The position numbers and the translations under genes were made by a program. Source: Saccostrea echinata (lineage: Eukaryota). From it: a stretch of DNA of 64,000 nt. The stretch lies in assembly GCF_033153115.1 (NCBI RefSeq), contig NW_026889764.1:930001-994000 (forward strand), read 5' to 3'. Shown here one piece after another: positions 680 to 53,935 of the stretch; the stretch's first letter is position 1; each line of letters starts with the position of its first letter. Under the pieces are notes generated by a model. It saw nothing but the letters and a program-made list of their open reading frames with translations, did not search any database and was not told the DNA's origin.

Positions 680-1965
680 GCAAGAGAGAAAGAAGAAGAG
701 GGAAATCCGAAAAAGAAGACCAAGACTTGGAATTTGGTGTTGACGACGTCCGGCATTTGAAGACTTTAAAAGGGGCGTGTCTTCGTGGAAACAAGCAACA
801 ATTTGATCATGAAATTCAAAAACATTTTGGAGAAAAACAACTTCTTTTTACAAGAGACAGCGATGGATATTCACTTTTGCATTTTGCTTGTGAAGGTGGT
901 AACTTGGAAATTCTAAAGCATTTACTCGAAGAGGGTTTTATGTTGGATTCAACAACATTTAAAGGTAAAACTGTGCTTCATATTGCCTCTCAATTTGGAC
1001 ACAAATCAATTTGTGATTATGTTTTATCAAAAGACACTGCACTACTAGAAATTACCGATAAACGTAAAGGAAACGCAGCCCATTTTGCCGCTGAAGGTGG
1101 CTACGTTGAAATACTAGAATTCTTGGTAAATAAAGGCATTAACCCAAAGCAGTTAACCGAAAGAGAAAGAAATATATTTCACATTGCAAGTTCCAATGAT
1201 CAACAAGAAATGTGTAAATATATAGTACAGACGTACCCAGAAATCATTCATTCTGTAGATGGTCTCGGATGGAATGCTCTTCATTTCGCCACAGCAAAAG
1301 GGCATATTGAAATGTTTGATACACTAGTTGGATTTGATCTTGATGTTAAAAGCAAAACAAATCGAGGGAATTCAGTTCTTCATATTGCATGTCTTAAAAG
1401 CCGACTTGAAATGTGCAAATATATCATAAACAGATGGCCATATCTAGTTAAAGAACAAAACAAGTTGAACCGAACTCCAGTATTCGCTGCAGTAGAAGGT
1501 GGTGATATAAATATATTAAAACTTCTGAAAAATTATGATGCAGATGAGAGAGCCATTGCAGCAGATAATCACACTTTGCTACATGTAGCAAGCGAACATT
1601 CCAATTATGAGATCTGTAAATACGTTATACAAACGTATCCTGAAATGACTAACCTTTCCTCAAGCAAGAACTTTAATGCGTTACACATGCTTGCAGCCGG
1701 ATCATCTAGATCAGAAGAGGAGGAAATCATGGTTTTCAACCTATTGGTAAGCCATGGTGTTGACATCTTTCAAACAACGAAAAAGGGAAGCTCTGTTCTA
1801 AGTCTTGCTTGCAAGAATCGGAAGTATGACTTATGCAAATACATGGTAGACCATCATCCAGCACTCTTAAAAATACCAAGCGTAGATCTGTTGAAGACAG
1901 CCGAGGAGACAAATGACAAAGAAATGATTGAATTGTTTAAGATGGAATTAAATATAATGACCTAA
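680..1965 (+). CDS. Terminal exon of ankyrin-repeat gene copy 1 (cytoplasmic domain of putative TM-ankyrin receptor; 5' exons outside window)
   Basis: Pyrimidine tract and acceptor tcttttcAG at 678-679, phase 1 like the paralogs' terminal exons. Open to TAA at 1963-1965. About 11-12 ankyrin repeats (GYSLLHFACEGG, GKTVLHIASQFG, GWNALHFATAKG...). The first 42 aa of ORF 553-1965 are intronic read-through. Confidence 0.88.
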
Positions 1966-2464
1966 GAATTCTTTGCTTCAGTGAACATGAAAATATTTTT
2001 TTTAGTTTATTGTGTTTATTAGTTTATTAGTTCTAACATTTATGAAAACTTAAAATGCAAAGATTCAAATGCTTATCAACAAGCAAAGTTCGAGTTGAAG
2101 CAAGAAGGGACCAAAGAAATTATGGAAATTCAGAAAGAATAGAAAAAATAATATCTCTCATACGGGCAGGCAAAAGCAAAGAAATTAACAATTTAAAAAA
2201 AAAATTAGAAATTGGTATATTTTACCAGAAAATTTAGATTTTGAAAATAGCAGGTAGACATGGCTGATATACAGTCCAGGCATATCTAGTTGTCCCTCTC
2301 ACTGATAATGGTCAAAGTCATCTGTTTGCATATGAATATACACAATCCTTGGACTACTTTTTAAAAGTACTTCGAAATGAAAACAATGTGTTTTAACGAT
2401 GTTACATTTTGTGTATTGCCATGACAATCGAAATCTTTATAAACTATGAAAAATGAATTCCATT

Positions 2465-3480
2465 TTTTTTTATACCCGAACTTTCTAAAGAAAGTTAGGG
2501 TATATTGTTGCTACCCTGGTCCTTAATCCGTTCGTCCGTCTGAAGCTTTTTTCTTCCTCAAACTCCTCTTTTATTCTAAGCAGTCACCAATTAATCTTTT
2601 GGAATGTGATAGGCGGTTTCCTGTAGATGTGCAATAAGGTTTTCGGATTTTAAATATTACCCCATGGGCAAAACGGGGGTCCAAAAATTTTTTTTTTCTA
2701 CAAAAAAATCTGGTTCCCAGAACTCCTATTACATTTACACAGTAACCTAATCATCTTTTGAAAAATTATTAGTGGTGTCCTGTAGATGTGCAATAAGGTT
2801 TCAGAATTTTGATTTTCACCATAGAGGTCAAATGGGGGTCGAAAATGATGGGTTTTTTTTTTACCATGACCTGGTCCCCCGAACTCCATCTACATTTTAT
2901 ACAGTAGCCTAATCATCTTTTGGAAGATGATTGATGGTATCCTGTACATGTGCAATAAGGTTTCAGAATTTTCGTTTTCATCTTGGGGGCAAAAAGGGAT
3001 CGGAAATGACTTTATTTTTTCTGCATTTTTAATCTACTTTTAGTGACCCAGGCATCATCATTTATGGAAATTAAAAACTGATGAACATTAAAACATGTAC
3101 ATTAACAAAGGCTAATTGTGCACAGTTATTGAAATCGAGCCAAAACTCTAGGAGGAATAGCGATTTGAATTAATCTCATAAAAATATCTTTACTTGTGCT
3201 CCAAGTATTAATGAAATTCAGGGTCAAAGCTGTAGGAAAAGTAGAGCTTTGAAAGAACGAATTTGATTCTACACTATATAATGAACTTTTCACATAAGAT
3301 TGATTTTTTTCTTTCCCAGTGCTTCTTGAAAAGATTTTTGAAGATTTTTTTTCCTATACATTCTCATATTAAACTTTGATCTTCTATTGTGGGTCCACCC
3401 TACCCATGGAGATTATAATTTGAAAAAACTTGAATTAACACTATGAGATGAAGTTTCACATAAGTTAAAACTTTTCGTAG
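2465..3480 (+). mobile_element. Non-autonomous Helitron/Helentron-type element (degenerate)
   Basis: Poly-T-ATACCC...GGGTATATTG 5' end, (TCCG)n-like microsatellite, three ~160-bp units containing GTAGATGTGCAATAAGGTTTC (about 2622, 2782, 2944). 3' boundary approximate. Confidence 0.6.
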
Positions 3481-3806
3481 AGACTCATGTATGATAATTA
3501 TACCCTGAGGGGTATGTTCACCTGTCTCAACAAATCATTTGAGGGTTCACTGAGTTGTTTTCAAATTATTAAACCTCGTTTAATTCATTTTTGCATACTC
3601 TGATGACAGTCGAGTATTTTCTAATAGATTAAAGTGAAGAACTTCCATGTTCTTGAGTAATAGGAGTTCCATGTGAACATTCGTAAAAAATCAGGAAAAA
3701 GTCTTCTGTTTCCTTTTGTAATTAGGTGTAGATCAAAGACTTGATTATGAGTAAACTTTTTTTTACATATCTGGGAGGGATTTCATTCTAGCTGCAGTAT
3801 GATGAA

Positions 3807-4154
3807 TTGATTGATTGATTGTATGTTGTTTTACGTCCCATTCGAGAATTTTTCACTCATTTAGAAACGTCACCATATACCGGTGAAGGGCTTCAAATTT
3901 TGACCTTTACTCGGCACTCAGGGCCATTAAGCAGTGAGGGATCTCTATCATGCTAACGCCTGTCGTGACATGGGGCCTCGGTTTTTATGGTCTCATCCGA
4001 AGGACCTGCAACTTTTACTTCAAAGTGCCGAGCGCATGGCGAAGGAACAGTTGCTACCCATTTTTTCGACTTAGGTCAGTCGCGGCCGAGATTCGAACTC
4101 ACGACCTCCCGATCACGGAGCAAGCGCTCTACCGACTGAGCTTCCGTGAACGGT
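3807..4154 (-). mobile_element. Full-length tRNA-derived SINE
   Basis: Minus-strand head has A box (AGCTCAGTCGG) and B box (GTTCGAATC), (TCAA)n tail, imperfect TSD AG(C/T)TGCAGTAT. Several related copies in the window. Confidence 0.85.
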
Positions 4155-7100
4155 AGTTGCAGTATAAATTACACAGTATAAAATCCTAAAAAGTTTATCA
4201 ATTTAAATTTAAAAAAAGAAAAAAAAATCTTATACTATTCCATTTTAATTTTTGGCCCAAGTAGATGTCAGAAAGAGAGAAAGAAGAGAGAGAAAATACC
4301 CCCAGGTTTATAGTCTTATGCAAAACTAAAAACTTATGATAGCAAGTGCTCGGAAAGATATACAATAACTGAAGAGCAATATTTTTTCACGCATTGTTTT
4401 CAGAATAGTTTAAAGCTGAAAATGTACACCATGTCACCATAGTATGACTTAATCCATGTTGAAAAAGTTATATTTAATGATATGTACACCATGTGCAATC
4501 CAATAATGATAATTGTGAAATTAGTAAGCGTAGGTGACGGAAGTCCAATATGAGGCGCGGGTCTAGAAATTTTAAAAGTTGTACACATGGTACATGTACA
4601 AATTTTATATTATAATCACGAACGAAGTTTTTACATAACTTTGTGATATCTATCTCCAAAAACAGGCAAATTGTGGGGAGGGGTGGTTTTGACAATATTG
4701 ATCGAGTGTGCGTTTTGGAGCGGGTTTTTTCCCTACCCAAATACTCATAAAAGATTGAACAATTTGATCAATTCTGAAAGTTGGCATCTAGATTATTTTT
4801 AAGTTCATCAAAAACGCTTTGCACTAAAGTAATAATATTTGTTATTTGTTATTTTGAAAATGAATTTAAAAAGTTCCAATTATGGGCCAAATTTTACACC
4901 CCTCAACCCACTTTTTTTAAAAACATAATTTACATCATTAATTAATTCTGTGATTTCAGACTGATAATGAGTTTAGTATATTAAATACTTATGAAATACG
5001 TTCACCTGGGTATTTTATACTCAATTTGTCAAATACATGTACTGTGTAAATCATAGACTTATTGTGGTTTTTTCTTTGCTTACCCAAATATGAAGGAGTA
5101 TGCATTACAGGTAAACATCTTACTGCAGGTATTACTGTCTGATGACAGCATTTAGTTTTTTGGGTTTTTTTTTTTCTTAAGATTCTTTTTATTTCTTACA
5201 TAACCGTATACCGTATACACAATCGTCTGCAAATGTGATGTATAATTCAATACAATAGCAGGTCCTCGGGGTCAGCATCAGTTTGGTCACTAATGTAATT
5301 TGATGATTTCCTTTTTTAGGATAAAGACAATTTCAATTTCGAGACAATCAATTTCGAACATTTAGATATGTTGTGTAGTAGTAGATTTGAAAATTTGTCA
5401 GAAAACCTTACCATACCTCCTCTCATTGACCTTCCTAAACCCATGACACCTGCATCCCCTATCAAGACAAACGGAATCAAAGAAACTACAGGCGAAGAAG
5501 TGAACAGTCAAGTCGTTTGTTTGAGGCTCGCCAAATCCGAGGAACCAAGAAAAAGGTCATGCAACTGGGGGTGTACAATGTTTCAAGGTATATATAAGAT
5601 AAATACTGCCAACTACAAAAAAGCAATTAATGCAAAAATAGTGTTAATTCATAAAAACATGTATCATAAGAGGGAGAGAGAGAGAGAGAGAGAGAGAGAT
5701 AAGGACTTACCTCAATATAATATGGAAAATTGACAATACTTTTCATTCTTAATTAAAAATTACCAACAATAGGGATCATACCTGTTCCTCTTTATAGAGG
5801 AAAGTGTGTACCAATACACCATATCCGCATTCAAATGTGAAATGAATATATGTAATTTCAATGTTTTTGTCAAGAATAGGTATACTCATACAGAATTAAA
5901 GGTAATACTTTAAAGAAATAAATGCAGCTTCCTAGACAGAATTTTTTGAAACGGTAAAATGTATCAAAATACAACATAAATAAGGCAAAAATTGAATGAA
6001 TAAAACAATTTATTAAAAACAAGATGTAATACATAATACATGTAGTATATCTTGTCTTTTAATTAGACTGGAGCATTGAGAGAAGAGTAGAACCCGTGGA
6101 TTTTGAAGAAATTTCACCAACCCAACTCAATATCAATAGTCTTCTTGAGAAACTCTACTGTGAGGCATGGTCCTTAAAAGGGGGGATTTTATCACAAAAA
6201 TACACTGAAAGATTTGAGAGCAGTCATAAACCGAAAACTGATTTCTCAAAGATGCGCTGCTTAACCCCATTATTCCCTTACAATGTGACTGCTTCCATAT
6301 AGCAATCCAGTTCATTTCTCGGGGCCCAGAATTTCATCACCAACTCAAGTTGGATTCATTTTCTTTCCATACTGATGAAACAGGTGAATATAATACACTT
6401 AGCCAAGAAAAACAACAAAAAAATCACCAAGATGGTGAAATGTGGAAACGAACACTGATAAATTTATGTATGCTACAGATGGATGCAGATACATGCCCTG
6501 TAAAAATGAATCAAATAACTCATTTTAAAAAAACCCAGATGAATCAGCCTCTTTAATCTATTCATTAAGTACAGGTCACATAATGAACATGTCGGATCTT
6601 AAAAATGAGGGTTCCTTATGGTCTTACAATATAAAGATTTCTTCGACACAGAAAGAAATCTTCGGTGCACCTTGTCCAAAATAATGAACACCACAACAAA
6701 TGAACAAATCGGTACCTCAGAATTCGCATTTTTTTAGCCTCTTGGTCATTCACTTGTAACTGTTAGAGTTATAGCACTTGCTTCCACAACTGCTATCCCG
6801 GTCCCTCCTTTTAGCAACCTTGCTTTGAAGAGTACATCTCAACCTGCAGCTCTGCAGTTACTTCGTGAATTTTTAGATTCATTTCCACCACCATCACGCT
6901 GCACGGTAGCCAAATCACACAAGCTGAAAAAAGAACTCGGCGACCTTGTAAGGTATCTAGCAAATTAAAATGTTGCAAAATTACTTTTTAAATTATTGTT
7001 AAAATTTTGTTTGAAACTGTTTATTAAATGGTGTTTACAGTCATAATATATTGGCTTATCTATTCCTTTGATCTTTTACTTTAAATCAAGGGGCTTAAAC

Positions 7101-9329
7101 ATTAACTTCGACAGTGAGTTCCCGAACAAAGAAAGCATTTAATAGCTTAAAAATCTGAGGATTGGACATACGCTAATTCGTTAATAATGGGTATTTTATT
7201 TAGCTATTAAAAAAAGAGAAAAAGCAGTAGCAGTATACAGTTTTGAAAATAATTGCTATAATGTGTGTTACAAAAATTGTGTGGGTCCTCTTATTTCTGA
7301 GATTTACCTTAATTAATTAAAGAAATTTGTTTCACCTTAAAATGAATTTGTGAAAACAAATTTGTATTTGTTTAATTATATTGTTTAAAAATTCAACTGC
7401 AATTTTTATTTCAAAATATTTATCTCTCTCTCTCTCTCTCTCTCAATATCAGGATATTTTATTGATTCATTCGATAATTTACATATACATGTACAATGAC
7501 ATGGCAAAACTGTTACCCCACCCCCCCCCCCTCTAAAATACAAAAGACATTATATCAACAAGAAAAATAGAATCATGTAGTCTTTTTTTTTTAAAGACCC
7601 TTCAAATTGATTACATAATTCGCTTGCAGACCCTTATTACCAGTAAATGCTTAAAAAAATACCGGTTTAACCCCCTCCTTTCCCCTCCGGTTAAACACGA
7701 ATTTTGATAGCCTCTGTTGATTTTCATTCATTTTTTTCAATGGACTATTTGACAGATACATGTATGTCTACCCCCTCCCCAGTTCCGTGCTTATAATCAT
7801 ACAGTTTGATTTCGCTTTGATATGGTGTCTCTTCGGCGGTATTAACTCAAAAACACTTCTTAGTGACAAAAAAATGGGTAATGAAATGAAAATGCAATTA
7901 TTGAATTTGATTTTCTTCTTGGTTTTCTTGCTGACGCACATGTGTAATATAATTTATGGTTTGATATAAAAACTGTTTCAGAATAGGGTATTCATTATCT
8001 TAAATCTCTTTTTATAACAAAGGAAAGATCATTATGCGACAAACTTTCGAAACAACAGATTTATCTCTCTCTGCTAAGCTTCTTTTTTCTTCTGTTGAGC
8101 TACCTTGTCCATCCAGCTGATTTTTTTTTTATTTTGGCCGAGATCGGGGCCAGTGTGAGTCAATTCAGCACGCAATTTATAGAATTGAAGAGAAGAGGCT
8201 GCTTCAACTTAGCAGAGAAAACAATCACAGAATTAAGATTTAAATTTATACGTATGATTAAATTGATAAAACATCAACATTTTTTTCAGAGTTTTGATCC
8301 CGCTTGTAAACTAAGAATTACAGTAATCTAAATTTCATTAAATTAATCATTAAATAAAATGTAGTTAATATGTACATGTATATAGAGTAATCAATAAGAT
8401 GTAGGTGGATCATAATTTAACATTTTTTTTCCATTTAAATCCATTAATTGACAAGTGTCAATTCACTCCCGACAAAAAGTGCGTCTAATTGTATCACTTT
8501 CGGAAATGGTAGTCTATTCTCAAGCTCTCTGGAAGAACCTCGGGTACGGCTATCGACTAATAATTTGAGGATTTTTTGGTCTTCAAATCGCCCTGGAAAT
8601 CCCATCTATCCAAAGTTTTCTGAAGAACTATATTACCATCAAATACGCGATATCAAATGATAATAGAAGATGATAAAAAGAAAGATGAGGATGGACATTC
8701 TCAGTGACCCCCTCCCCCCCCCCACACACACACACATGTACACACATTTTCTGTTGCAGTATGGTCAAATCTTTCGCAGTTAATGTGTTAATGTAACCAG
8801 AATTATTTTTGTGGAAAAGAGAACCTCGGAACTTAATAGCCATACCCCCCCCCCCCCTTCTATAGGTTTTTAGAGTTTGGTCCATTTCTGCATAGTCTTG
8901 GTGTCAAAGTTTTGCTTATGTCACTTGACTTGTCACTTATTGCTTTCTTCCTGCCTCCTCCCTTCCTCCTCCACTTTGTAAAACTATCTGCCAAAGTGTT
9001 TGCCAAACTTATAGTCATCTAAAATGTATCTCTGACACTTCAATAAGCTACAAGAAAGTGTTATATATGTAGAGTGAAACTTTGTTAACTCAAATCGTAA
9101 GATATTTCGAAGTTTCATTTGGTCCAATCAAATCTGAGATAACGAGCATAAACGTGTTTTTAGATCTAACATTATCTTTTGTTTTCTGGCCTCACTGACT
9201 GAAACTGTCAACGAATTTACAATGTATCGAATACCTGCAACCTCAATTACACACCCATTGCAAACTAATTCATTTATGGCTTTTGATACAAACTCAACAT
9301 TATTTAACGTAAATTTGTTGTTTTTCCAG

Positions 9330-10075
9330 AAAGAAGATGGGTGAACAAGGCGTGCAGAATGCCTATAGTTTCAGATATTAATAAAATCATATTCAATTTG
9401 TGATTTAAGTATTTAAAATAAAGTTCTCATATTGAAATTTATGAAATTATGATTAACAAAACTTTTCTGAGAAAAAAGATCTCGGAAAAAATTATTCTTT
9501 TATTAAAAAAATAAAATGGTATTCGTAGGATTCGAACCCCTATCAATAAAAATCCGGAGTATCATATTGATTCGAGACTAACACGCTAACCACTACGCCA
9601 CGCAGCTCCTGACGAATTGTGGCATTTAAATCATATTTGTGATATGACCCTTGACTTAATGGACTTCAAGTATTTCTCGGAAAGATGCGAATGCTTTGTC
9701 ATAAAACGGAAGTGTACTTTTAAGGTATAGTGGGTCTTTGCTCCATGTTTTTGTAAACCAAAAAATGTATATTTTTATGCAAACTTTTAGGATTAACTTT
9801 CAAAAAAATGGAGCGAAGACCCACTCATATCGAAAAATTTTCTTAAAGTGTGAGAAAACGATCCTTTTTGTACTCTTTAGTGTGTGTATGCTATTTCGTA
9901 GGCAAATAATTTCAGTCTTTGTGAGATTTATGTAAATTGTAGAGATTTAGCATAAAATATACTTTTATGTTAGATGAAATATCAAAGAAAATTTTTATAT
10001 AATTGAGATTTTATTTTTCACTTCATGTTTGTCGCACTATAGGCACTTCGCCCGCCTTGTTCACCCATCTTCTTT
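9330..10075. mobile_element. Non-autonomous TIR element carrying an internal tRNA-like segment (Kolobok-like ends, tentative)
   Basis: Perfect 23-bp TIR AAAGAAGATGGGTGAACAAGGCG / CGCCTTGTTCACCCATCTTCTTT and subterminal GCCTATAGT/ACTATAGGC. No clear TSD. Confidence 0.7.
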
Positions 10076-40439: not shown

Positions 40440-42330
40440 AAATATTTCAGACATTGAAATCTTCATTTAGCATTTAACTCCATGTACTATTGTGTCTGTG
40501 ATAATAATGTTTTAAATCATGGGTTGATTGAGTTTTTGTCTATCATCAGAAGAGTTCCATTCGAATTTCCCACTTTGCCAACTTTAGTTAAATGTGAAAT
40601 ATTGAGATCAAGTGAAGTTTTATTAACTTTTTGTGACAAAAAACTGTTATTTTGTGCAATGTTTGAAGGACACAATATCAGACTGACAAATTATTAAACA
40701 TTCAAAAACAAAACAATCATTTAGGAAGAAGTGAGAAAAGTGTTATAATTAGGAAGAACTAAAGGACCATAACAAACGGCCCCAAAGGCGATTGTAAAAG
40801 TGTCGCTAAAATATACCCAAAATACTTAGGTACACAATTGACTTTACATCGGAAATAATTGATCAAAAGATTTTTTGAAATGTTTTTAATGTAACATTAT
40901 GTAATGCTATATAATTCTGAAAAACCTATGTTTTATAGGCAGCTGTCGGCTGGCTTGCGCCAAGACAGTCACGCTGGACAGTGCTCTCGTCCACTATATG
41001 GCAGAGCCTGTGCACATTGTTAATCAAATTGTTATCGTATGTATTTGGAGTTCAGCATCATAATTCCACACTGTTTCGATGCACAGTTTAGACGGTTATA
41101 AATACATGGGCCACAAATCCAATCAAAAATTGGATCCACCCATGTGCACCCATGTCGCTGAGTGGCTATATTAAAATATTTCGGTCAAACCGTTTAGTCT
41201 AAGGAGAAACTTCGAGAATTCCAAATATTCACAAATTTGAAAAGTGGAACGTCCTGACTTTGTGAATCTAAATCCAGAGGTAAAAATTTTCATTGATAAT
41301 TACGTGTTTATGTGTCTATTCACAAATTAAAAGTAAGAGAACAACACTGTTTTCCTATGGATAAAATTGACCTACACTCAAGCAATAGAATATGCCTTTA
41401 ATTAACAGTGAAAAAAATAAACAACCACATTGAAAGATACGATAAAGCTCATAAAAATATTTACGTCACCGATATTTAGGTTACCGTGTTTTAAAGTTAA
41501 TTAGAATTTAAAAATCGAAAGCTTTTTGAACAAATTTGCGGGTAAAACTTAATTATTTAAAAACAGAGAAATACATTGTTTCCTACACTGGCATTTTTTC
41601 TTTCTGCAACAAAAGTGTACAGATGCAAATGGAAGTGCAAATATGAAAAAAAAATATATATTTTTTGCATCTGTATGATTTGAAAATTGAATTGACATAA
41701 AAGCATTCTCCAGTAGGATTATGGTCTAAAAACCGGATGTTTCCATTTTGAGCAATTTGTTTACTTTGTACAATTTTAAGAGCAAAGTTTTTACGTAACA
41801 ATTCGTAAGGTCAATATTGTTTGTGCTAAATTATTTGCATTATTTGTATTTTGTTGCTTGTTTGATCTGATAGTGTATCGTCCATGGTTATACACTCAAA
41901 TTTAAATTTTAAAAAAATTATATATTATACTAAATATTTATAATATAAGAAGGCAAATTTTACATCTTATTATGCCCGGTAAATTTTTACATAAAAAAGA
42001 CAATTTAATTTGAATTGTTATTAAACAAACTGTTCGTTAATGAAATTGCATATTTTTCAGAAAGAATTGGTAAAATTATATGATTGTGTTATTCAACGCC
42101 TATAAATGTTAATCATCGATAAATGATTTTTTTTTATTAATCCAGATTCGCTAATTAAAAATATGCTTCTTGAAAAGGGTTGACTTCAGGCTTATTTAGG
42201 ATACCATAATCAATATTTACAATATTAAGGGTTTAAGCATTGACTTATACATACAGAAAGAGTTAAGCTCCAGACAGCTCAGTACTATTAGAACTCCATA
42301 TTGTATAGACGTAGGAAATGTAGTCCCGCA

Positions 42331-43182
42331 TATGGCATGTCAAATGTTGCAATATTCGATCTTTTCCATTTGTATTGTATAATTTTCTATTTGTATTGTA
42401 TAATTTTCCATTTGTATTGTAAAAGTTTCCATTTGTATTCTATAATTTTTCATTTGTATTCTATAATTTTCCATTTGTATTCTATAATTTTTCATTTGCA
42501 TTGTAAAATTTTTATTTGTATTCTATATTTTTCATTTGTATTCAATAATTCTTCATTTGTATTGTATAATTTTTTATTTGTATTGTATAATTTTTTATTT
42601 GCATTGTATAATCTTTATTTGTATTGTATAATTTTCAATTTGTATTCTTTAATTTTTCCTTTGTATTGTATAATTTTTATTTATATTGTATAATTTTCCA
42701 TTTGTATTGTATAATTTTCCATTTGTATTGTATAATTTCTCATTTGTATTGTAAAATTATAGAATACAACTGGAAATTTATAGAATACAAATGGAAAATT
42801 ATACAATACAAATGGAAAATTATAGAATACAAATGGAAAATTATAGAATACAAATAAAAATTATACAATACAAATGAAAAATTATACAACATAAATGAAA
42901 AATTATTGAATACAAATGGAAAATTATACAATGCAAATAAAAATTATACAATACAAATGAAAAAATATACAATACAAATGAAATATTATAGAATACAAAT
43001 AAAAATTTTACAATACAAATGAAAAATTATAGAATACAAATGGAAAATTAAAGAATACAAATAAACATTATACAATACAAATGGAAAATTATAGAATATA
43101 AATGGAGAATTATAGAATATAAATGGAAAATTATACAATACAAATGGAAAAGATCGAATATTGCAACGTTTGACATGCCATA
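42331..43182. mobile_element. Foldback non-autonomous DNA transposon made of inverted 20-21-bp minisatellite arrays (IS3EU-type ends)
   Basis: TIR TATGGCATGTCAAA(T/C)GTTGCAATATTCGATCTTTTCCATTTG, 6-bp TSD CCCGCA (42325-42330, 43183-43188), unit ~TTTTCCATTTGTATTGTATAA flipping orientation near 42755. Confidence 0.88.
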
Positions 43183-44760: not shown

Positions 44761-47183
44761 TAGCCCCGATTTTTAACATCTTCTTAGCCCGGATTTTTCA
44801 ATTCGCGACATTTTATTATGAATTCTGTCGAAGATGCAGCCAGATGTTTGGCTGCATATAAAGGGCAAAATCTGAACTCTGTCAGAATGGATTAAATGTT
44901 TTAGAAATACATGTATATTAAAGAATCGTGTTACAAAGTTAAAAAGGCAATACACAAACCATCTATCCTTCCGTTTTCACTCGGAGAGTGATAAATGAAT
45001 TAGAAAAACTACATGAACAATATGTTATGGTTCCAGCAGACAAGGCTTGTATGAAAATAACAAGGTTAAAAGATCAGAAGACAACAAACCATTGTTAAAT
45101 GATAGTTGTAAGGTTAAGTATTCAGATTGCAAGTCAGTATTACGTCAATTTAAGAGGGTCGACCCTCTGATGAGAGAGAAAACTTTCCAGTAAAAAAATC
45201 TAATATTACTCATAGTTCACTTTACCAGAGTTAACTCTTATTGACTACTCAAAGGTCTCAATTATTAAACTCTGGTAAAGTAAACTATGAATAATATTAG
45301 GATATATAATATTATGCTTCAATCATTCTTGCCAGAGAGGTATATCGTCGCGTTTGTATACTCGTATTTATCTTTATAATATTTATCAAGCTTTCTAACA
45401 AACACAAGTCTACAAATTTTGAACATAACCACAATAACCCTAACTTTAGCAGCTCACGGTTAAACTGAGTTCATCGATTGTTCTCTGAAAAGTAAATAAA
45501 ATGAAGCAACTGTGGTCGAAAATTATGCCGAATGATGCAAAGAAAACGTTGTTGCACCACATTTACATGTACGTACATGTATTACTGTACGATTTCACAT
45601 GACGTACAAGTGAGTGTTTGTGAGTTCATGATTGAGTGGTATTGAGTAATAAACTTCCCTTTTAATTTCTTCCTTGATAGATTTTGTCTGTTTATATGAT
45701 TTTTTTTTTCAGTTTTTTTTTTCCTTTGTCAACATCACTTTTATGAGGACTGGGATTATGAAGATTTTTGTGCATGTCATACTTGTTTTTGTCTATTTAC
45801 ATGACGTCAACGATATGAACCTTATAACTGGGTACGTTTATTCGTGCATTTTGTTTCAGCAGAAAGTGAAGTTCATTATTACCGGCTTTGTATATACATT
45901 CAACAGTTTTCACAATTTTTTTTTCTGTGTGGCCTCATTTATATTCATATTCATAGTTGTTTCCTTTTACATTGATTAGCTCTTTATAAAAACTTGCACC
46001 TTATGTGTCATGCAATGCAACATTAACATGAATTAAAATGATTTAAATAAGATGATATCATGGTGAAAAGACGGTGAGAAAATGAATTTTTAAAGAATGA
46101 TTAACAAGTTTAAATAGAATGTAATTTATCAAGCACACGTTATGCAAACTATGGCATAGTGCAATGCAAAGTATATACATGTAATATATTTAACATTTTA
46201 GCAATATGGATACAAATTTAACGTGACTCAAGTTGAAAAATGCCCAATGAGTAAAGAGGAATGGGACGCTGCGTGGACCAGACTGAAATGTAACGAAACA
46301 CATGGATACCACTGTGTTCCAGACAAAAACATGACATCCCTGATAGAGTTCTGCTACATACGTGGAAGCAAACTTCCATTTGAGAAAGGTTTAATGAAAC
46401 TTTTCTTGTGCATAACAATTATACTTTAGTAGAAAATATGAAAAATGTAATTCAATTTCAAATACATCATAAAATGGGTCAAGAAATTCTTAAAAGCAAA
46501 TATGCATTCCACATACAGAAGATCATGAATCCCCCTTCATTGACTGCTTTACTTTTAATTAACTTGAGATCAGGGTGATATCCACTCTCAATCATCTTCT
46601 TGCAATATTAAGAGTTAAATGTAGTCTGCTCTGTATGTATTCTTCCTCTGGTTTATTATAAGTATTTGCAAACCTTCTCACTCAGTCTCACGTGTCCAAT
46701 CCCTTTGCTTACCTTTTTGTGCTGACAGGGAATTGTCTTGAATTGGCGGCGGATGGCATACTTAACCATTATCCCTGTGAGAATTCATTTCCCTGTGGAT
46801 GCCCAGATAGATTCTTCTTCAGTAATGAAATATATAAATGTAAGTCGTTTTCAGTACTTCTTCTTTACTGAAGTGCTAAAGGTTTTGCTTTCTCATTGCT
46901 TAATGCCAATCGTTTTACAAAATGCAAATACATAGCACACAAGTTATATGTTACTGGATTGTTTTGAGAGACATTCTTTTTAATATCAAAAACAATTTTG
47001 ATTATTTTTGCAAACCTTCATATTGTAAGTAATAGAAAATTAAAAGTTGCATTCCTAGGAATAAAAAGTTTTCAGGACTGTTCATATAACGCACCTAAAT
47101 TCTTCTTTTATTTCTAGATCCTAAATGTCTACAAATCAATCAAGAACTTGGTTGTTTCCATGCTGATATTCAATGCTTTATTT

Positions 47184-48453
47184 GGGTGAATTAAAAAAAA
47201 TGACCAAATGCATATTTATCAACCCACACTAAAAATACATGCAATGAAAATAGATTTCTATGTCTCAGCATATGTCTTTAGATAGTGTCTAAATACCTGC
47301 CAAATATCTCATTGATATCTCAATTAACAAAAAAGTTATGCCCAAAAATAATGCTAAAATTGTCAGGAGTGCAACACCTTTTTGTGTCATTTTGAAATTT
47401 CAATATTTTTTGTGACATTTTGAAATTTCAATATTTTTTGGAGATCTGTGAAATAAAAAATAATGCTTCATGTTGAAGACTTTCCTGATAATACTCAAAG
47501 TATTGAGCTTTAAATGTGGACTGTCATAACTTTTGTTTAATCAAGTTGTGGCCATGGCTGATGTTTAAAAAAATGTTGTACCATGTCAGGAGTGCAACAG
47601 AAAAAATTTAGTGTTGCCGAAAAAACATCAATTGTAAAATTCGGGTAGGAAATTAAGACAAAAAAGAATTTTGGAAGTGTAAAATAATAACTGATATACA
47701 TTTTAAAACTTAAAAATGTTATATAAATCACAAGCAGCATTAATGAGAGTCAAGTATATGTGCATACCCAAAAATGTCAGGAGTGCAACATTTGATGTTA
47801 TGCTCCCAAGCATGAAAAAACTATTATCATTATATCATTTTCTGATTTATATTTTGGAAAATAAAGACACAAAGAACATTTTTACCAAATAGATTTATCA
47901 ATTACAGGATCTGTCTGTGCTTCAGATCCATATTTCTATGGTCAGGAGTGCAACACATTTTTTTAAAGATTCAAGTTGTGTGACGAAAAAACTTCTATTA
48001 ATGCTTAGAAGTATTCATTAATTAATAATGATCTTTTTGTATAATTTAAAGCTAAATTATTGACAGTTTTATTATTGAAATCCTTCCTTTTTTCAAGTTT
48101 ATGAATTCAGATGTGTTTTTTATCTTTTTTGTGATTTTTTTAATGAACGTTAAAAATAAACACACTAAAACATTGTAATAAAATTCAAGTAATTCCTCCT
48201 CACCTTCACTGAAACAACAGAACAAGTTCTTATGCAATTTTCACTTCACAATTCTACTTTAAAAGCCCCAATGCCTTTGGTCAGGAGTGCAACAAATATG
48301 TTAGAATTATAAATCATCCAATACGAATAAAAATAACGAAAAAATGATGAGTAGAATTTTTCTGGTGGGTTACTGTGTTTGTCTTCTAAAGGAAAATATG
48401 CTTTAAAATATATTTTATCTTCTAAATATAATTTAAGCTAGTTTTTTGTTGTT

Positions 48454-48499
<46 letters not shown>

Positions 48500-49568
48500 A
48501 TAAAATAGGGTATAGTTCCAGATAAAATGCGAATTTTAAATACTTTCATCTGTTTTAATTATGAAGTATTGGACTATAAATATTGCACAATTTCATTACC
48601 ACTTGATGTTTCCAACACTTTATGAATGTTTGTGTTCTATGGTTTTAATTTTAAACTTTACTGCAGTCAGGAGTGCAACAAAACTGCTTCATAATTACCG
48701 ATGGTTTTTAACTATCTTTACTAAAAAATAAATTGAAAGAAATGCTTGATACTATTTGATGTTCAAAACACTATGTCTATCAACAAATTACAGAAATTTT
48801 ACAGTCAATTCAGGGAATAGATTTCATCATTTCACATATATTTTAAATACAATTCATATATACTACACTTTGCAAATAATCATGTTTTAAGAAAAACCTG
48901 CTGTAAACGATGAAAAATATCAACACTACAAATTGATTTACAAAGTAAGAATGGGTTATTGTGTGTTATAATTTTTAAAACAATATTAAATAAAATACAT
49001 ATCAGATGTCAGGAGTGCAACACAAAAATGTAACATAGGGTCACTTCAAAATCTAGTATTTTTGGTAAGAGAACTCGTATATAACAATTCTTTTTTTGGC
49101 TTAGATTTAAAGAATTGACTTGAACGGACAAAACAGTGAATTTTGGGGAATTTTATTGCTTCATATTTTTTTCATCTTAAAACTTTTCAAACCAGAATTG
49201 AAAAAATAATGTAAAATAACAATCAAAAAGCCAATTTTTGTCACATGTACAAGAGAAGATACTCATTCAAGGTCTAGATTTAATCATTTATACCCCTTTT
49301 ACCATTTTGAAGCATAAAAAAACTATAATTTCTTGTGATTATGTATTTTAGAAAGTCTTTTAAGGTGTAATGATATTTTCTTTTTTCAAAAGAAATTTTA
49401 CTAATAAAAATTCTGAAACTTTTTAATCCAATTGTCTATTCTATTGCCACTTCAGGATTTTAAACTAGAATGCATTTGCAATATGATGATATAGGTGAAA
49501 AATATGTTATAAGTAGTTGAATTTTGCCAAAAAAATTCAGTTTGATGGTCATTTTTTTTAATTCACCC
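47184..49568. mobile_element. 2385-bp non-autonomous TIR transposon with 4-bp ATTT TSD (Sola-like signature) inserted in exon 4 of copy 3
   Basis: ATTT|GGGTGAATTAAAAAAAATGACCA ... TGGTCATTTTTTTTAATTCACCC|ATTT. Excision restores a 70-nt exon, the same length as copy 2 exon 4, ending TCA AG|GTATGT. Confidence 0.92.
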
Positions 49569-49865
49569 ATTTCAAGGTATGTGTTCTTTTAAGAGCCGGT
49601 CTCTTTAACTTTAACTCTAATATATTGGCTGGACACAGCATCATAGTCTAAGAATTTCTCCAAACTTTCTATGAGTAAAGTCTTTGTTGCCATAAACTTA
49701 TATCAGGCAAAAATTGGTTGTTATGTGTTGTGGTTTCCACTGAACATTTTCCTTCTTGGTAACCAAATCAATAGTATTCTTTTCCTCATCAAACCAACAA
49801 TATCAATATATGACATTCAATTTTCATTCTAGCTGATAGTACACTTTAAAGTGAGGTAGATAATC

Positions 49866-49869
<4 letters not shown>

Positions 49870-49920
<51 letters not shown>
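49870..49920. repeat. (CT)n microsatellite
   Basis: Directly visible. Confidence 0.95.
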
Positions 49921-49922
<2 letters not shown>

Positions 49923-50592
49923 ATAGAATGTTGCTGTTATAACCTTTTTACACCAGACCTAGCATTTCTATTGTTTTTCCTGCGTTGTTGATTGAGTTTT
50001 AGCCTGTAACACCTATCAATTGTGAATACAGAGTGTTTTTCGTCTTTAAAATGTATGCCAAATGTATCCATGGCTACCACTTGGACTACATTCTACAATA
50101 TTCTAATTAATTTCCTTACACCGTAAGTTACTATGAAGTGTAATATTTTGTGAGAGGGATTAATTTGGTTTTCTTAGTCTTTATTAAGGCTCAATAAAAA
50201 TTCAAAAGTACCTGATCTCAATTTTTCACATTTTCCCGGCTGTTACCATGACAATCAAGAAACATAGCAACCAAATTTTATCTGATTTATTTTTTGGTTT
50301 CAAGCTATAACAGAGAGCAATGTTTCATCTCAATAAGTGACCATTCGTGCCAAAAAAAACTTAAGTGGTTAAGAGTATATAGCTCTTAATTTTCAAGAAT
50401 CATGGGAAAATGCATACCAAGTACATGTACTAGTAATTACAAACAAGTCTCTACTAATTTTATTTTTCTTTCAAGTTTTAACAAAAATTTAAAAGAAGTT
50501 ATCTTCTTAAACACAAATAGACAGGCAATTGCCAAAAGTATATGTCTAAATTAAAAGAACAAGCAAGACTTCTTTTTTTCTGTTGTTGTTTT

Positions 50593-50637
<45 letters not shown>

Positions 50638-50864
50638 TACATGTATTTTATTTTTATCTTTAAAGAGCTTTAAACCAAACGGCAAATCTCAAGATTGATG
50701 ATGCAAAGATTTTCAATATATCTACCAAGTGCCACGATACTAAAATTCAATGTGTCGTGTCAAAGTAGGTGTCATATATTTTGTATGTATGTGTATACAA
50801 TAGCCTATCTATACATTTAGGTACTGTTTTACATATTCAAAATTATCCATTTTTCAAACAGAAC

Positions 50865-50867
<3 letters not shown>

Positions 50868-50944
<77 letters not shown>
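50868..50944. repeat. (TA)n microsatellite
   Basis: Directly visible. Confidence 0.95.
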
Positions 50945-50947
<3 letters not shown>

Positions 50948-51589
50948 AATTCAACCTAAGATCTACTTTTTTATTGAATGCCTCTGCTCTATTGAACATA
51001 AACTTATCAGATACTTTTACCTTTTTTTTTTCGAGCAATGAACATTCCATTTTTGTATTCGTGAGCTTCGTTATTGCAACACAAAAATTAAATACTAGAT
51101 CAATATTTCTTTTTCGAAATACCAAACATGATGTCAATATGCCTATTCATTAGAACTGTTTGGAAGAAATGCATAGAAGCAAGTACTATTACATATGTAC
51201 AAATATTATTATATTGCAGACTTTCGTTCCACATAACATTCGTATCTGAAACCAACAAAAGCATCCAATATATAACTCCGAAAATGATGACACCTGGAAG
51301 ATCATCTCTATAGTTATGATTTTAGTACTTGCAGTAATATTTGGCCTCGTCGTTTATGTGTCTTATCGGATACACAGAAAGTTTATTCAAATTACAGGTA
51401 TGTCTAACGATCCTTGTACAAACTTTTCATTTCTGATTTTTTTAGAGTCTTTGCGCAAAAATGTTTTGAAGTAATAGATATGAGTGATTATCCAGTTTCA
51501 TGGATTTGCGCATTTCGCTGATTTCAATTTGTATAGGAAAGGGGAGACAAATAATCACGTGTCCGCACGTTGGTTATCACCTCATAACC

Positions 51590-51722
51590 CCCATAAATAG
51601 ACACTATACCCTTAAATACTCTTTAATCCCTCAAATAGACACTATACCCTGAAATAGACACTTATCCCTCAAATAGACACTATACCCTTAAACAGACACT
51701 TATGCCTCAAATAGACACTATC
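51590..51722. repeat. Short minisatellite (AAATAGACACTATACCCT-type units)
   Basis: About 7 imperfect 19-21-bp units. Confidence 0.75.
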
Positions 51723-53935
51723 ATAATGTTCTGTTTATTAAATATTGTTCAAATGAATACATCTTCGTGATTAGAATGCTCCTAGTTGTGGGTTCCAAAC
51801 TACTAAGAGTATATTATAAGTATGTTAATTACAACACATTGCGACTCTCAAATTAAAATTAATACAATTTTCGGCTTTTTAAATGCTCAGTCTGAATTTT
51901 AAAAAATAAAAATTATTAATTTTACGATTTACGATTTTTGGTAATATTAAATCCTTGACTTTTTCAAAATCACAATATGTTCTTCTCTCACCATATCCAA
52001 CCAACCTAACATCACTTCACAGCTGGGTCAGCTATAGAACCAAGAGTCATCAGAATTCAACCTCCGGAAGAACATTTGTTACAAGAAAGCCAATCAAACG
52101 TTCGGGACACGATTGGCCAGTCAGCCGGAAGTCCCCAGTCTACAGCTGAACACCATCAGTTACAAGACAATGGAACTAACTTTCAAGGTATAACTAATCA
52201 TTATTTCATCTCAATTCTTCGTCTCAGATACAAGACAGTGGAACCTTAAAGGTATAACTAATCAATTCTTCACCTCAGTTACAAGATGGTGGAACGTTCA
52301 AGGTATAACTAATCTTTTTTTATTCAATTCCTTATCAACGAGGAAAAAGCGTAAAAAGTTAAAAAGTAAAACTGTGTAAAAAAAAAAATAATAATAATGT
52401 TCACTGGACTTTGAACAATATTTCATTCAATATATTTCATTCCAAAAAAATGAAGCAGGTGGAGGGATCGTTACACATTTTGTTAATTTTTCTTTTAATG
52501 TTACCATTTTGCAGACTCGGATTTTGCGAGTCTCATAGCAGCGTGTAGAAAGGGAGATGTACAAAGATATAATAAACTGACAACACCACTGGAATTTGAT
52601 AAAGACTTACTGACAATAAAAGATAATATGGGATGGACAGTCCTCCATCATGCTCTATATTGGGGATGCCATGAAATCGTGTAAAGTTTATTGGGATTCA
52701 AAGAGACGGACTTATATCGAAGAGACAATACTGGAAGGATCGTTCTGCACTTGGCTGCAAAAAGAGGGAACACTGAAACTTTTGACGCCATTCTGCAAAA
52801 GGCTTCCAAAACCGATTTAATGCAGATCAAGGACAAAAATGGTCTGATCCGTTCTGTTACGCTGCCCATGCTGGACAGAAAAGTATACTAGAGGACATAA
52901 GAAGAAGGGGATTCGATATTACAAAGGTAACAAAATACGGTGAATCTACTGCACATCTCGCATGTATTGGAGAAAGCTTAGACATTTTGAAGATGGCTTC
53001 GGAAATTGATCAACAGTGTACACAGGAATCAATGAACAATGGACAGGAGAAAGAAGAGGAAATAATCAAGAGAACAAATAAGATGGACTGGAATACCCTC
53101 CAATATGCAGCCAAGTCTGGAAACACAGAAATTTTACAGTTCTTGGACGAGAGACATGTTCTTGTACATAATGTAAACGAAGATCTGAAATCTGCCTAAC
53201 ATTCTGCTTGTGAAAATGGACATCTTGAAGCTGGAGGTATATTGCTCAACATCATCCTGAAAGTATACATACCACAGATAAGACTGGGAGACATGCTGGC
53301 CATTTTGTAGCTAAATGTGGAGATGTAGAAGTTCTGAGATACCTGATCGAGGACTGTAATCTGCAAGCAAATGCACTGTCATCTCAAAATATTAACATTC
53401 TTCATATTGCATGTTCCCATGGAAGACTCCATATTTGTAAATATATAGCAGATAGATATCCAGAGTTAGTCAAACAAGAAAGCAAAAAGGGCTGGAATGC
53501 AGCTTTGTTTATAGGTGAAAAGGGGGGAGCTGATGAAGATAGGATAGACATTTTTGAGTATTTACTGAAAACACATAATCTCTTTGTGTATCATGTCTCT
53601 AGAGCTGGAAAAACTGTTCTGTACAATGCCTGTGTTAATAGGTCGTACATGCTCTGTGAACATCTTCTTAAAAACTATCCAAATCTATTAACTGTCGAAC
53701 GTTCAATGAACCCTCAAAATGCAGCAAAAGATTCAAAGATAATTAATCTAATACAGAAATATTCTACAAGAGAATGACATACCAAACTTCAATTCAGTAA
53801 AAGGAATGTATCAGGCAATTGAATCTATGGGTAAAGGTTACACAGTGAACAATGAAAATATTACTGTGATAGGAAGTATAGATACACTGTGGCTCTGTAT
53901 CTGTTATTTAGATACTAGGATATTTTTTTTCAACA

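What the first reader, a model, noticed from the sequence alone, without database searches (positions are those of the whole stretch)
680..53777. Tandem array of three paralogs in different states of decay (birth-and-death cluster) next to SHQ1
Seen: three same-strand ankyrin terminal exons, each entered in phase 1 and sharing a distinctive C-terminal block (copy 2 AALFITERAGAENDRIHILEFL...VYHVSRSGKTILYNACVNRS; copy 3 AALFIGEKGGADEDRIDIFEYL...VYHVSRAGKTVLYNACVNRS; copy 1 more distant, ALHMLAAGSSRSEEEEIMVFNLL...GSSVLSLACKNR). Copies 2 and 3 have identical lengths for exons 3 and 4 (111 and 70 nt), while their introns show no visible similarity. Copy 1's exon is intact, copy 2 has two lesions, copy 3 has at least six. 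Inference: old tandem duplication with ongoing turnover, as is typical of invertebrate immune/recognition clusters. The array probably continues 5' of the window.
Basis: partly seen in the sequence, partly recalled or inferred. Interest (0 to 1): 0.78.

Follow-up and report, generated by a model that had tools for sequence, protein, structure and literature searches.

The report
Oyster ankyrin receptor cluster, one pseudogene
Three neighbouring oyster genes encode membrane proteins with the same cysteine-rich outer domain and an ankyrin tail: the first is intact and also carries a LRRK2-type GTPase switch, the second is transcribed but may have a one-base defect, and the third is dead, which is ordinary gene-family turnover with one unusual protein design.

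Summary
The window is Saccostrea echinata contig C15:930001-994000. The three same-strand ankyrin terminal exons exist, all entered in phase 1.

- **Copy 3 (52515-53777)** is a pseudogene. It has two TAA stops and two frameshifts in the last exon, a broken exon 5 and no GT at the exon 4 donor. The ankyrin exon of its S. cucullata counterpart is intact.
- **Copy 2 (33091-40439)** is transcribed and correctly spliced across exons 4, 5 and 6. Its only demonstrable lesion is a one-base deficit in exon 2, which no reads covered. The "660-bp insert" is more simply intron 2, with the exon's last ~14 bases hidden by the assembly gap.
- **Copy 1** is not a short paralog. Its exon ends a ~31-kb gene reaching 29 kb upstream of the window. 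The domain order is 10-Cys ectodomain, membrane helix, Roc GTPase, COR, ankyrin.

The three belong to three old clades, and copy numbers differ between oyster species. This fits birth-and-death evolution, but the array does not continue 5'. Further members lie 160-290 kb downstream on the other strand.

The scan had already noted other Roco genes elsewhere in this genome; this membrane-spanning, ankyrin-ended form is another variant. No functional evidence was obtained. SHQ1 lies at 56603-58822 on the minus strand.

The parts
1..595 (.). High-copy interspersed repeat inside the last intron of copy 1's gene
   Evidence: 1984 candidates genome-wide; 39 scored copies elsewhere at 90-93% identity, all ending near base 595.
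680..1965 (+). Copy 1: terminal ankyrin exon (phase-1 acceptor, TAA stop) of a long ectodomain-TM-Roc-COR-ankyrin gene. Its other exons lie upstream of the window, at C15:901102-923944.
   Evidence: for the exon. for the upstream exons, which are collinear with S. cucullata P0144 and P0147.
16858..17008 (.). Assembly gap between copy 1 and copy 2; no exon found beside it
33091..33180 (+). Copy 2 exon 1: start codon and signal-peptide-like hydrophobic stretch, followed by a GTAAGT donor
   Evidence: 74% identical to the P0001 N-terminus.
35243..35415 (+). Copy 2 exon 2 (ectodomain). It has a one-base deficit at 35285/35286 that changes the frame, and it runs into the gap.
   Evidence: Not covered by any contig.
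35416..35595 (.). Assembly gap hiding the expected last ~14 bases of copy 2 exon 2 and its donor
   Evidence: not bridged, letters not looked up.
36294..36404 (+). Copy 2 exon 3, 111 nt
37203..37272 (+). Copy 2 exon 4, 70 nt
   Evidence: spliced joint 37272|37650 in run X1.
37650..37849 (+). Copy 2 exon 5: stalk and membrane helix, ends in phase 1
   Evidence: an X1 contig covers it and joins both neighbouring exons.
39061..40439 (+). Copy 2 terminal ankyrin exon, intact, TGA stop
   Evidence: X1 and X2 contigs at 98-100% identity.
45758..45835 (+). Candidate only: copy 3 exon 1 (ATG, hydrophobic stretch, GT donor in phase 0)
   Evidence: no homology support.
46202..46388 (+). Copy 3 exon 2 (ectodomain), open
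46729..46839 (+). Copy 3 exon 3, 111 nt, open
47118..47187 (+). Copy 3 exon 4 at the frame-keeping length of 70 nt, followed by GA, not GT
50664..50768 (+). Copy 3 exon 5, first piece, ending in TAG
51250..51397 (+). Copy 3 exon 5, second piece with the membrane helix. It is in another frame, ~480 nt further on, and has a phase-1 donor.
52515..53777 (+). Copy 3 terminal ankyrin exon: TAA at 52682 and 53197, frame changes near 52849 and 53232
   Evidence: 78.5% identical to S. cucullata P0300, whose frame is open.
56603..58822 (-). SHQ1 exons (PF04925), tail to tail with copy 3
   Evidence: three matches, 58.9, 52.4 and 30.7 bits, cut-off 22.

Best explanation
The stretch holds three neighbouring members of an oyster multigene family of single-pass membrane proteins. 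All three share an N-terminal ectodomain with 10 invariant cysteines, a membrane helix whose exon ends in phase 1, and a last exon, entered in phase 1, that encodes about ten ankyrin repeats and a family-specific C-terminal block.

Copy 1 is the long form. Between the helix and the ankyrin exon it has exons for a Roc GTPase and COR-A/COR-B, so it is a membrane-spanning Roco protein, and it looks intact. Copies 2 and 3 are the short form, with the helix joined straight to ankyrin. Copy 2 is transcribed and spliced; whether its one-base defect in exon 2 is real, an allele or an assembly error is open. Copy 3 is a pseudogene that died after the split from S. cucullata.

The three come from duplications older than the split of Ostrea, Crassostrea and Saccostrea. 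The family keeps gaining and losing copies (birth and death).

Inferred mechanism, not shown: the ectodomain binds something outside the cell. In the long form this sets the Roc-COR switch, and the ankyrin array recruits partners. Short forms signal through ankyrin alone or act as partners or decoys. Because the Roc-COR block sits between two phase-1 boundaries, it could be lost or skipped without breaking the frame, which would link the two forms.
For: SHOWN.
- Exon structure, phases and stops.
- Ankyrin Pfam matches: E=1e-49 for copy 1 and 1e-41 for copy 2.
- Copy 1's upstream exons: P-loop exon with Arf/Roc matches; a Roc match to profile positions 56-92; COR-A at 61 bits against a cut-off of 35.3; COR-B at E=4.9e-4. 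They are collinear and stop-free against P0144, a 1564-aa S. cucullata protein, from the ectodomain to the stop codon. The GxxxxGKT, DFAGQ and THAE motifs are kept.
- P0090, a protein from a Logan contig that is 85% identical to copy 1, joins COR-B, the 54-nt exon and ankyrin.
- Spliced GT..AG joints 37272|37650 and 37849|39061 in run X1, with introns uncovered apart from repeats.
- Ten invariant Cys across 18 ectodomains.
- Tree of 26 rows: copy 1 with the long forms (100/100); copy 2 with S. cucullata P0001 (99/99) and then P0002; copy 3 with O. edulis P0080 and own C15:1153k (100/100); the copy 2 and copy 3 clades are sisters (85/80).
- Turnover: O. edulis has 7 proteins of the copy 3 clade on one chromosome. 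S. cucullata has two long forms and two copy-2-type genes, paired on two contigs: P0144 with P0002 on the 170,726-nt contig and P0147 with P0001 on the 101,508-nt contig. S. echinata has one of each.
- The architecture recurs. Of 64 ectodomain-exon matches, 10 have a same-strand COR exon within 40 kb downstream, against ~0.14 expected. Of the 149 best COR relatives, 7 carry the ectodomain; they come from S. cucullata, S. echinata, O. edulis and C. virginica.
Against: - No reads or contigs were laid on copy 3, so its lesions rest on the assembly alone. The supporting argument is that two of them are substitutions to TAA and that more than 100 neighbouring and paralogous exons are open.
- The link from ectodomain and helix exons to Roc-COR in this species rests on collinearity with predicted (Gnomon) models of S. 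cucullata, not on a transcript. P0090 begins inside COR-B.
- Copy 1's signal-peptide exon was not found. Its helix exon matched P0144 only weakly (E=0.012).
- On the exon pieces of copy 1 the Roc matches are below Pfam's cut-off (25.3 and 18.4 bits against 27). They pass only in the full-length relatives (35.7 bits).
- Relative-rate tests show no faster change in copy 3 than in its S. cucullata counterpart (24 vs 16, 18 vs 17 and 23 vs 15 unique changes; p>0.19). The death is therefore recent or the test is weak.
- The S. cucullata model P0300 itself starts at the helix and lacks an ectodomain, so that lineage's gene may already be reduced.
- No NCBI S. echinata protein for copy 1, 2 or 3 was returned. 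For copy 1 this is expected from the length filter.
- Nothing bears on ligand, GTP use, expression pattern or immunity.
Confidence: 0.7

Rival explanations
1. Graded decay: copy 2 is a true young pseudogene, broken by a frameshift and by an insertion into exon 2, midway between intact copy 1 and dead copy 3.
For: The one-base deficit at 35285/35286 puts a stop in either frame of exon 2. No intact S. echinata protein of this gene was returned among 89 hits. One low-depth X1 contig also lacks a base at 39901 in the ankyrin exon (2.7 of 7.1 depth).
Against: The 1.38-kb last exon and exons 1, 3, 4 and 5 are open. Transcripts are spliced correctly. The 'insert' sits exactly where copy 3 has intron 2 and ends in a good acceptor before a 111-nt exon 3. 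The frameshift site was covered by no contig. Copy 2 is not evolving faster than P0001 (20 vs 33 and 11 vs 14 unique changes).
Confidence: 0.3
2. Copy 3's lesions are assembly errors and all three genes work.
For: No reads were laid on copy 3. The two frame changes are single-base deficits, the commonest kind of long-read error.
Against: Two lesions are base substitutions to TAA where the S. cucullata counterpart has Tyr and Leu. Exon 5 is interrupted and exon 4 lacks its donor. Six independent errors in one gene are unlikely when copies 1 and 2 and nearly all of 104 scored COR exons are open.
Confidence: 0.05
3. Copy 1 is two genes: a truncated receptor remnant (ectodomain plus helix, C15:901-906 kb) and a separate cytoplasmic Roc-COR-ankyrin gene. 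The fused models in databases are prediction artefacts.
For: There is no transcript across the helix-to-Roc stretch. P0090 starts in COR-B. 4 kb separate the helix exon from the next weakly matching exon. Most COR exons in the genome (at least 90 of 104 entered) have no ectodomain exon within 40 kb.
Against: The same order is predicted independently at two S. cucullata loci and in S. echinata, O. edulis and C. virginica, the last with 4 isoforms. Co-location is about 70 times chance. The helix exon ends in phase 1 with a GTGAGA donor and no stop-terminated reading follows it. All exons lie on one strand in protein order.
Confidence: 0.15

Closest known systems
Roco proteins (LRRK1, LRRK2, DAPK1, MFHAS1; bacterial and Dictyostelium Rocos)
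   Same: Copy 1's gene has a Roc G domain directly followed by COR-A and COR-B, with the P-loop and DxxGQ motifs kept. Like LRRK1/2 and DAPK1 it also has ankyrin repeats (domain orders of the human proteins from passages of PMC6337361).
   Different: No kinase, LRR, WD40 or death domain was found by Pfam. The ankyrin array is C-terminal, not N-terminal. There is an extracellular Cys-rich domain and a membrane helix. The word 'transmembrane' occurs 0 times in the review PMC6337361. The Roc domain has a ~130-residue insert.
[quoted passage not shown] 2021, eLife, PMC8195603; passages read)
   Same: Oyster-specific expansion. The N-terminal Cys-rich extracellular domain and helix form a constant part. 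The intracellular modules vary and include NTPases and ankyrins. Architectures differ between close species.
   Different: Pfam found no DED or TRADD-N in P0144, P0147 or the exon at C15:910515-911111. That paper names STAND and AIG GTPases, not Roc-COR, in this setting. Whether its Cys-rich domain is the same one could not be checked, because figures and source data were not available to me.
Molluscan TIR/TLR-like and MyD88-like proteins carrying Roc-COR (Aplysia immunome study, PMC9334734; passages read), and other Roco genes noted by this scan in the same genome (Roco-HEPN, Roco-TIR)
   Same: Roc-COR is used as a module in large, lineage-expanded mollusc gene sets with interchangeable end domains.
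   Different: Those carry TIR, Death, HEPN, EF-hand or Mbt domains. None is described with this 10-Cys ectodomain and a C-terminal ankyrin array.
Birth-and-death multigene families (concept recalled from Nei and Rooney; no paper seen here)
   Same: Old paralogs group by clade across species, lineage-specific gains occur, a pseudogene sits in the cluster, and there is no sign of homogenisation between neighbours.
   Different: Only one clear pseudogene among the three. The members differ in domain content, not just sequence. Locus-level synteny across species could not be examined.

Membership tests
Roco (Roc-COR) proteins: copy 1's gene | COR domain | tested here: met
   COR-A at 61 bits (cut-off 35.3, E=1.5e-16) and COR-B at E=4.9e-4 on the exon C15:919584-920864.
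Roco (Roc-COR) proteins: copy 1's gene | Roc G domain with nucleotide-binding motifs, directly N-terminal to COR | tested here: met
   The exon pieces match Roc profile positions 3-46 and 56-92 but below cut-off (18.4 and 25.3 bits). GCAGAGKTT, DFAGQ and THAE are present. The full-length relative P0144 scores 35.7 bits against 27. The exons lie in order just upstream of COR.
Roco (Roc-COR) proteins: copy 1's gene | All domains on one polypeptide | tested here: inconclusive
   COR-B to ankyrin is joined in the transcript-derived P0090. Ectodomain to Roc rests on collinearity with predicted models.
Roco (Roc-COR) proteins: copy 1's gene | GTP binding and hydrolysis | not testable with these tools
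   Needs protein biochemistry.
Oyster 10-Cys ectodomain / helix / ankyrin family (copies 1-3) | Ectodomain with 10 invariant Cys | tested here: met
   Alignment A1 of 18 proteins shows 10 invariant Cys. The exons are present in copy 2 (35243-37272), copy 3 (46202-47187) and copy 1 (C15:901102-904308). 64 matching exons were found genome-wide.
Oyster 10-Cys ectodomain / helix / ankyrin family (copies 1-3) | Hydrophobic helix exon ending in phase 1 and a last ankyrin exon entered in phase 1 with the C-terminal block | tested here: met
   for sequence. for the copy 2 joint. for the block. The helix is read by eye from the residues; no predictor was run.
Pseudogene (copy 3) | Frame-breaking lesions in a gene whose relatives are open | tested here: met
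   At least six lesions. P0300 of S. cucullata is open over the same 414 residues at 78.5% identity.
Pseudogene (copy 3) | Lesions present in the animal's DNA, not only in the assembly; no intact transcript | not tested
Birth-and-death family | Paralogs older than the species, grouped by clade across species | tested here: met
   Tree of 26 hand-picked rows.
Birth-and-death family | Copy-number differences between species at the same locus | tested here: inconclusive
   Protein counts differ.
Frizzled-type cysteine-rich domain (considered for the ectodomain) | Match to the Fz profile or fold | tested here: not met
   No Fz match in any of the 18 ectodomains at E up to 10. The PDB profile search gave nothing below E=0.33. 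The only hint is an automatic cluster name in the Atlas. The fold could not be tested because structure prediction was off.

The most novel reading that the evidence does not exclude
Oysters have an undescribed class of membrane-spanning Roco GTPases. A mollusc-specific 10-Cys ectodomain and a single helix are wired directly to a Roc-COR switch, with exchangeable tails (ankyrin, UBA, none; sometimes extra Ig domains outside). There are at least 11 such loci in S. echinata. The short ectodomain-helix-ankyrin genes, copies 2 and 3 here, would be derivatives that lost the phase-1/phase-1 Roc-COR cassette. The SHQ1-side cluster would then show long form, short form and dead short form side by side. 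This would be a receptor-coupled G-domain switch with no counterpart among studied Roco proteins.
Probability: 0.45. Interest if true: 0.65.

Novelty: new variant of a known kind. Interest (0 to 1): 0.42.

Why it matters
As a gene cluster with one pseudogene, this is what oyster genomes are known for, and it matters little by itself.

What deserves notice is the long form. Roco GTPases such as LRRK2 are studied as cytoplasmic switches whose upstream input is unclear. A natural family in which Roc-COR is fused behind an extracellular domain and a membrane helix would offer a system where the input side is defined.

The family occurs in at least four oyster species and has many copies. The neighbouring short forms would give a natural comparison with and without the switch.

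For annotation, current names ('ankyrin-3-like', 'latroinsectotoxin-like', 'phosphatase 6 regulatory subunit-like') hide the family.

Tried and rejected
- **Synteny through SHQ1 in other oysters.** I used contig lengths from protein records instead, which show only co-residence on a contig, not order.
- **Testing the copy 2 frameshift with reads.** The four runs are Logan contigs, sparse and exon-only. None covers exons 2 or 3.
- **Fold of the ectodomain.** The PDB profile search gave only chance-level matches to collectin and mannose-binding protein at E>=0.33. Pfam on 18 ectodomains gave nothing. The Atlas gave only unnamed mollusc clusters, one auto-named 'FZ domain-containing', and clusters with nSTAND3 plus ankyrin. 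I reject a Frizzled assignment for lack of any sequence match.
- **Haplotig check.** No second near-identical copy of exon 2 of copy 2 or copy 3 appears, so I did not pursue alternative haplotigs.
- **C47 relative.** I looked for an ankyrin exon of the closest long-form relative (C47:13.43 Mb) in the 20 kb downstream and found none. It was left out of the tree.
- **Copy 1's signal-peptide exon.** Not found. The apparent match upstream of exon 2 contains a stop and is chance.
- **Other open frames.** Larger open frames between the copies have no Pfam match.
- **dN/dS.** Not possible without orthologous DNA. Protein relative-rate tests were done instead.
- **Literature.** Four searches were run: ROCO + oyster; Roc-COR + transmembrane + ankyrin repeats + invertebrate; COR domain + Roc + bivalve + ankyrin; Saccostrea echinata + genome assembly. 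They found no description of this architecture.
- **Exon-by-exon searching.** Spliced models were searched exon by exon.

Full report
**Where we are.** The window is G000:C15:930001-994000, plus strand. NCBI proteins named Saccostrea echinata sit on a contig of 16,472,332 bases, which is exactly the length of C15. The genome is therefore S. echinata. There are two N runs, 16858-17008 and 35416-35595.

**The observation.**
- Three long ankyrin-coding stretches lie on the plus strand.
- Copy 1 (680-1965) and copy 2 (39061-40439) are open to their stop codons.
- Copy 3 (52515-53777) is spread over three frames.
- Each follows a pyrimidine-rich AG acceptor and is read in phase 1.
- By tblastn, copy 1 vs copy 2 is 29% identical over 395 residues (E=1.7e-50). 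Copy 2 vs copy 3 is 51% over the last 181 residues (E=7e-67).
- SHQ1 (PF04925) lies at 56603-58822 on the minus strand.

**Copy 2.** The best database relatives are two S. cucullata proteins, P0001 (85%, 696 aa) and P0002 (77%, 665 aa). Mapping them back gives six exons:
- 33091-33180: start and signal-like stretch.
- 35243-35415+: exon 2.
- 36294-36404: 111 nt.
- 37203-37272: 70 nt.
- 37650-37849: helix.
- 39061-40439: ankyrin.

Exon 2 lacks one base at 35285/35286, where relatives read Cys-Pro-Met. Either frame then meets a stop.

The exon runs into the gap after ...GYRL. By comparison with copy 3 (187 nt), about 14 more bases and the donor are expected, and they are on neither side of the gap. 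Right of the gap comes a high-copy repeat and a (TA)n run, then a good acceptor at 36293.

Copy 3 has an intron at the same codon (46389-46728).

**Reads.** Only four small runs hold the sequence, all as Logan contigs. I laid them on 34600-40599, and 4 of 4 were laid.
- Run X1, labelled 'DNA?', has contigs that cover exons only.
- X1 carries two GT..AG joints, 37272|37650 and 37849|39061, exactly at my exon ends. I infer that X1 is RNA and that copy 2 is transcribed and correctly spliced there.
- Identity is 98-100%, as expected for another individual.
- Exons 2 and 3 have depth 0 in all four runs. The frameshift is therefore untested.
- One X1 contig lacks a base at 39901 (2.7 of 7.1 depth), which may be an error.

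**Copy 3.** Its closest relatives are S. cucullata P0300 (78.5% over 414 residues, open) and O. edulis P0080 (58%). Three collinear matches in three frames show:
- TAA at 52682, where P0300 has Tyr.
- A one-base deficit near 52849.
- TAA at 53197, where P0300 has Leu.
- A one-base deficit near 53232.

Upstream, exon 2 (46202-46388) and exon 3 (46729-46839, 111 nt) are open. Exon 4 at the frame-keeping 70 nt (47118-47187) is followed by GA, and the nearest GT would give 68 nt. Exon 5 is split: 50664-50765 ends in TAG, and the helix part 51250-51397 lies ~480 nt further on in another frame.

That makes at least six lesions. No reads were laid here, so the call rests on the assembly.

blastn between the two loci finds only exons 2 and 3, so the introns share nothing visible.

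**Copy 1 is something more.** Its best relative, P0090 (85%, from a Logan contig), has a non-ankyrin N-terminus. That N-terminus maps 9.6 and 6.1 kb upstream of the window. The open frame there is 427 codons and matches COR-A (61 bits, cut-off 35.3) and COR-B. Exons further up match Roc and carry a P-loop.

A search of 1.84 billion representatives with the COR exon gave 1297 proteins at E<=0.001. The best is P0144 (1564 aa, 57%), with P0147 (1594 aa) fifth in the list. Both are S. cucullata 'uncharacterized proteins'. Both have an N-terminal hydrophobic stretch, the same 10-Cys ectodomain, a helix, Roc, COR-A/B and ankyrin.

P0144 maps collinearly and without stops onto C15:901102-931944:
- Ectodomain exons at 901.1, 903.95 and 904.24 kb.
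- Helix exon at 905.4-905.6 kb (weak match).
- Further exons at 909.7, 910.5-911.1, 916.0-916.2, 916.6-917.2, 917.3, 919.6-920.8 and 923.9 kb.
- The window's ankyrin exon.

GCAGAGKTT, DFAGQ and THAE are kept. The 80 kb upstream hold no further ankyrin exon.

**The family.**
- Within S. echinata, the ectodomain exon has 64 matches at E<=0.001 (168 candidates, 150 scored).
- The COR exon has 114 matching stretches at E<=1e-10 (206 candidates, 104 scored). Nearly all are open.
- Ten of the 64 ectodomain matches have a same-strand COR exon within 40 kb downstream, against ~0.14 expected.
- On C15, further family members lie at 1.153, 1.186 and 1.218 Mb on the minus strand, and at 16.05-16.22 Mb.
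- Of the 149 best COR relatives other than P0090, 8 were listed as matching an ectodomain profile. I count 7, dropping P0179, whose domain E-value is 46. They come from S. cucullata, S. echinata, O. edulis and C. virginica. Their tails are ankyrin, UBA-like or nothing, and one has Ig domains outside.

**Relationships.** The tree covers 26 ankyrin regions: 11 from this genome and 15 database proteins, chosen by hand from 143 hits. All others were left out.
- Copy 1 groups with P0090 and the long forms (100/100).
- Copy 2 groups with P0001 (99/99) and then P0002 (100/100), inside a Crassostrea-containing clade.
- Copy 3 groups with P0080 (96/79) and own C15:1153k (100/100).
- The copy 2 and copy 3 clades are sisters (85/80).

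The duplications therefore predate the oyster genera.

Evidence for turnover:
- O. edulis has 7 proteins of the copy 3 clade on one chromosome.
- In S. cucullata, P0144 shares a contig with P0002, and P0147 shares one with P0001.
- Both long forms find only copy 1 as their best match in S. echinata, and nothing resembles P0002 more than copy 2 does.

Relative-rate tests show no excess change in copy 3.

**What is known.**
- Passages of Kaur et al. 2021 (PMC8195603) describe Crassostrea expansions with a Cys-rich extracellular domain, a helix, DED and TRADD-N, and variable tails including NTPases and ankyrins.
- Passages of the Aplysia immunome paper (PMC9334734) report Roc-COR in TIR proteins.
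- A Roco review (PMC6337361) never uses the word 'transmembrane'.
- A brown-alga paper (PMC11378527) treats Rocos as candidate immune receptors.
- The scan's own notes list other Roco genes in this genome.
- None of my four searches found this exact design. Supplements and figures were not visible to me.

**Limits.** The ectodomain fold is unknown. Function is inference only.

**Verdict.** This is a real but ordinary birth-and-death cluster. The decay series is overstated for copy 2. One member has an unusual, apparently undescribed Roco architecture.

Noticed in passing
window 1-595: High-copy interspersed repeat: 1984 candidates genome-wide, scored copies 90-93% identical, ending about 85 bases before copy 1's acceptor.
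   Followed up: no
window 35596-35800 and 38031-38380: Two copies of one repeat family, in introns 2 and 5 of copy 2. The first has a tRNA-like GGATTCGAACC motif. Contig depth runs to the thousands in all four runs, and chimeric joints link the two copies. The first abuts the assembly gap and a (TA)n run at about 35836-35920, which probably caused the gap.
   Followed up: partly
run X1 on window 37203-40347: A run listed as 'DNA?' behaves as RNA: only exons are covered and canonical spliced joints are present.
   Followed up: partly
window 39901: One low-depth X1 contig lacks one base inside copy 2's ankyrin exon (2.7 of 7.1 depth). It may be an error or a frameshift allele.
   Followed up: no
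protein P0145 (matches C15:919.6-920.8 kb exon): A 295-aa 'hypothetical protein' filed under the oyster parasite Bonamia ostreae is 62% identical to the oyster COR exon and sits on a 1283-base contig. It is probably host (Ostrea) DNA in the parasite assembly.
   Followed up: no
G000:C15:1153515-1154609 (minus strand): Closest in-genome relative of copy 3. It is annotated by NCBI as a 417-aa ankyrin-only protein (P0301, 100% over 398 residues), with no ectodomain or helix in the model.
   Followed up: partly
G000:C46:4.4-11.9 Mb: At least 25 of the scored COR exons lie on this one contig, a very large Roco gene cluster.
   Followed up: no
protein P0177 (S. echinata, contig of 38,885,414 bases): A relative with the 10-Cys ectodomain followed by immunoglobulin domains and then Roc-COR, with no ankyrin.
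   Followed up: no
protein P0001 residues 30-161: Atlas models with a similar ectodomain fold include mollusc clusters carrying the nSTAND3 NTPase plus ankyrin (TM 0.84 and 0.67 by query). The ectodomain may also front STAND-type switches.
   Followed up: no
window 42301-42693 and 50800-51000: A tandem repeat that reads as reiterated 'FHLYCIIF' in one frame, and a long (TA)n microsatellite inside the broken exon 5 region of copy 3.
   Followed up: no
window 30431-30811 (minus strand) and C15:898807-899409: Similar open frames without Pfam match recur between and upstream of the genes. This is probably one transposon family.
   Followed up: no
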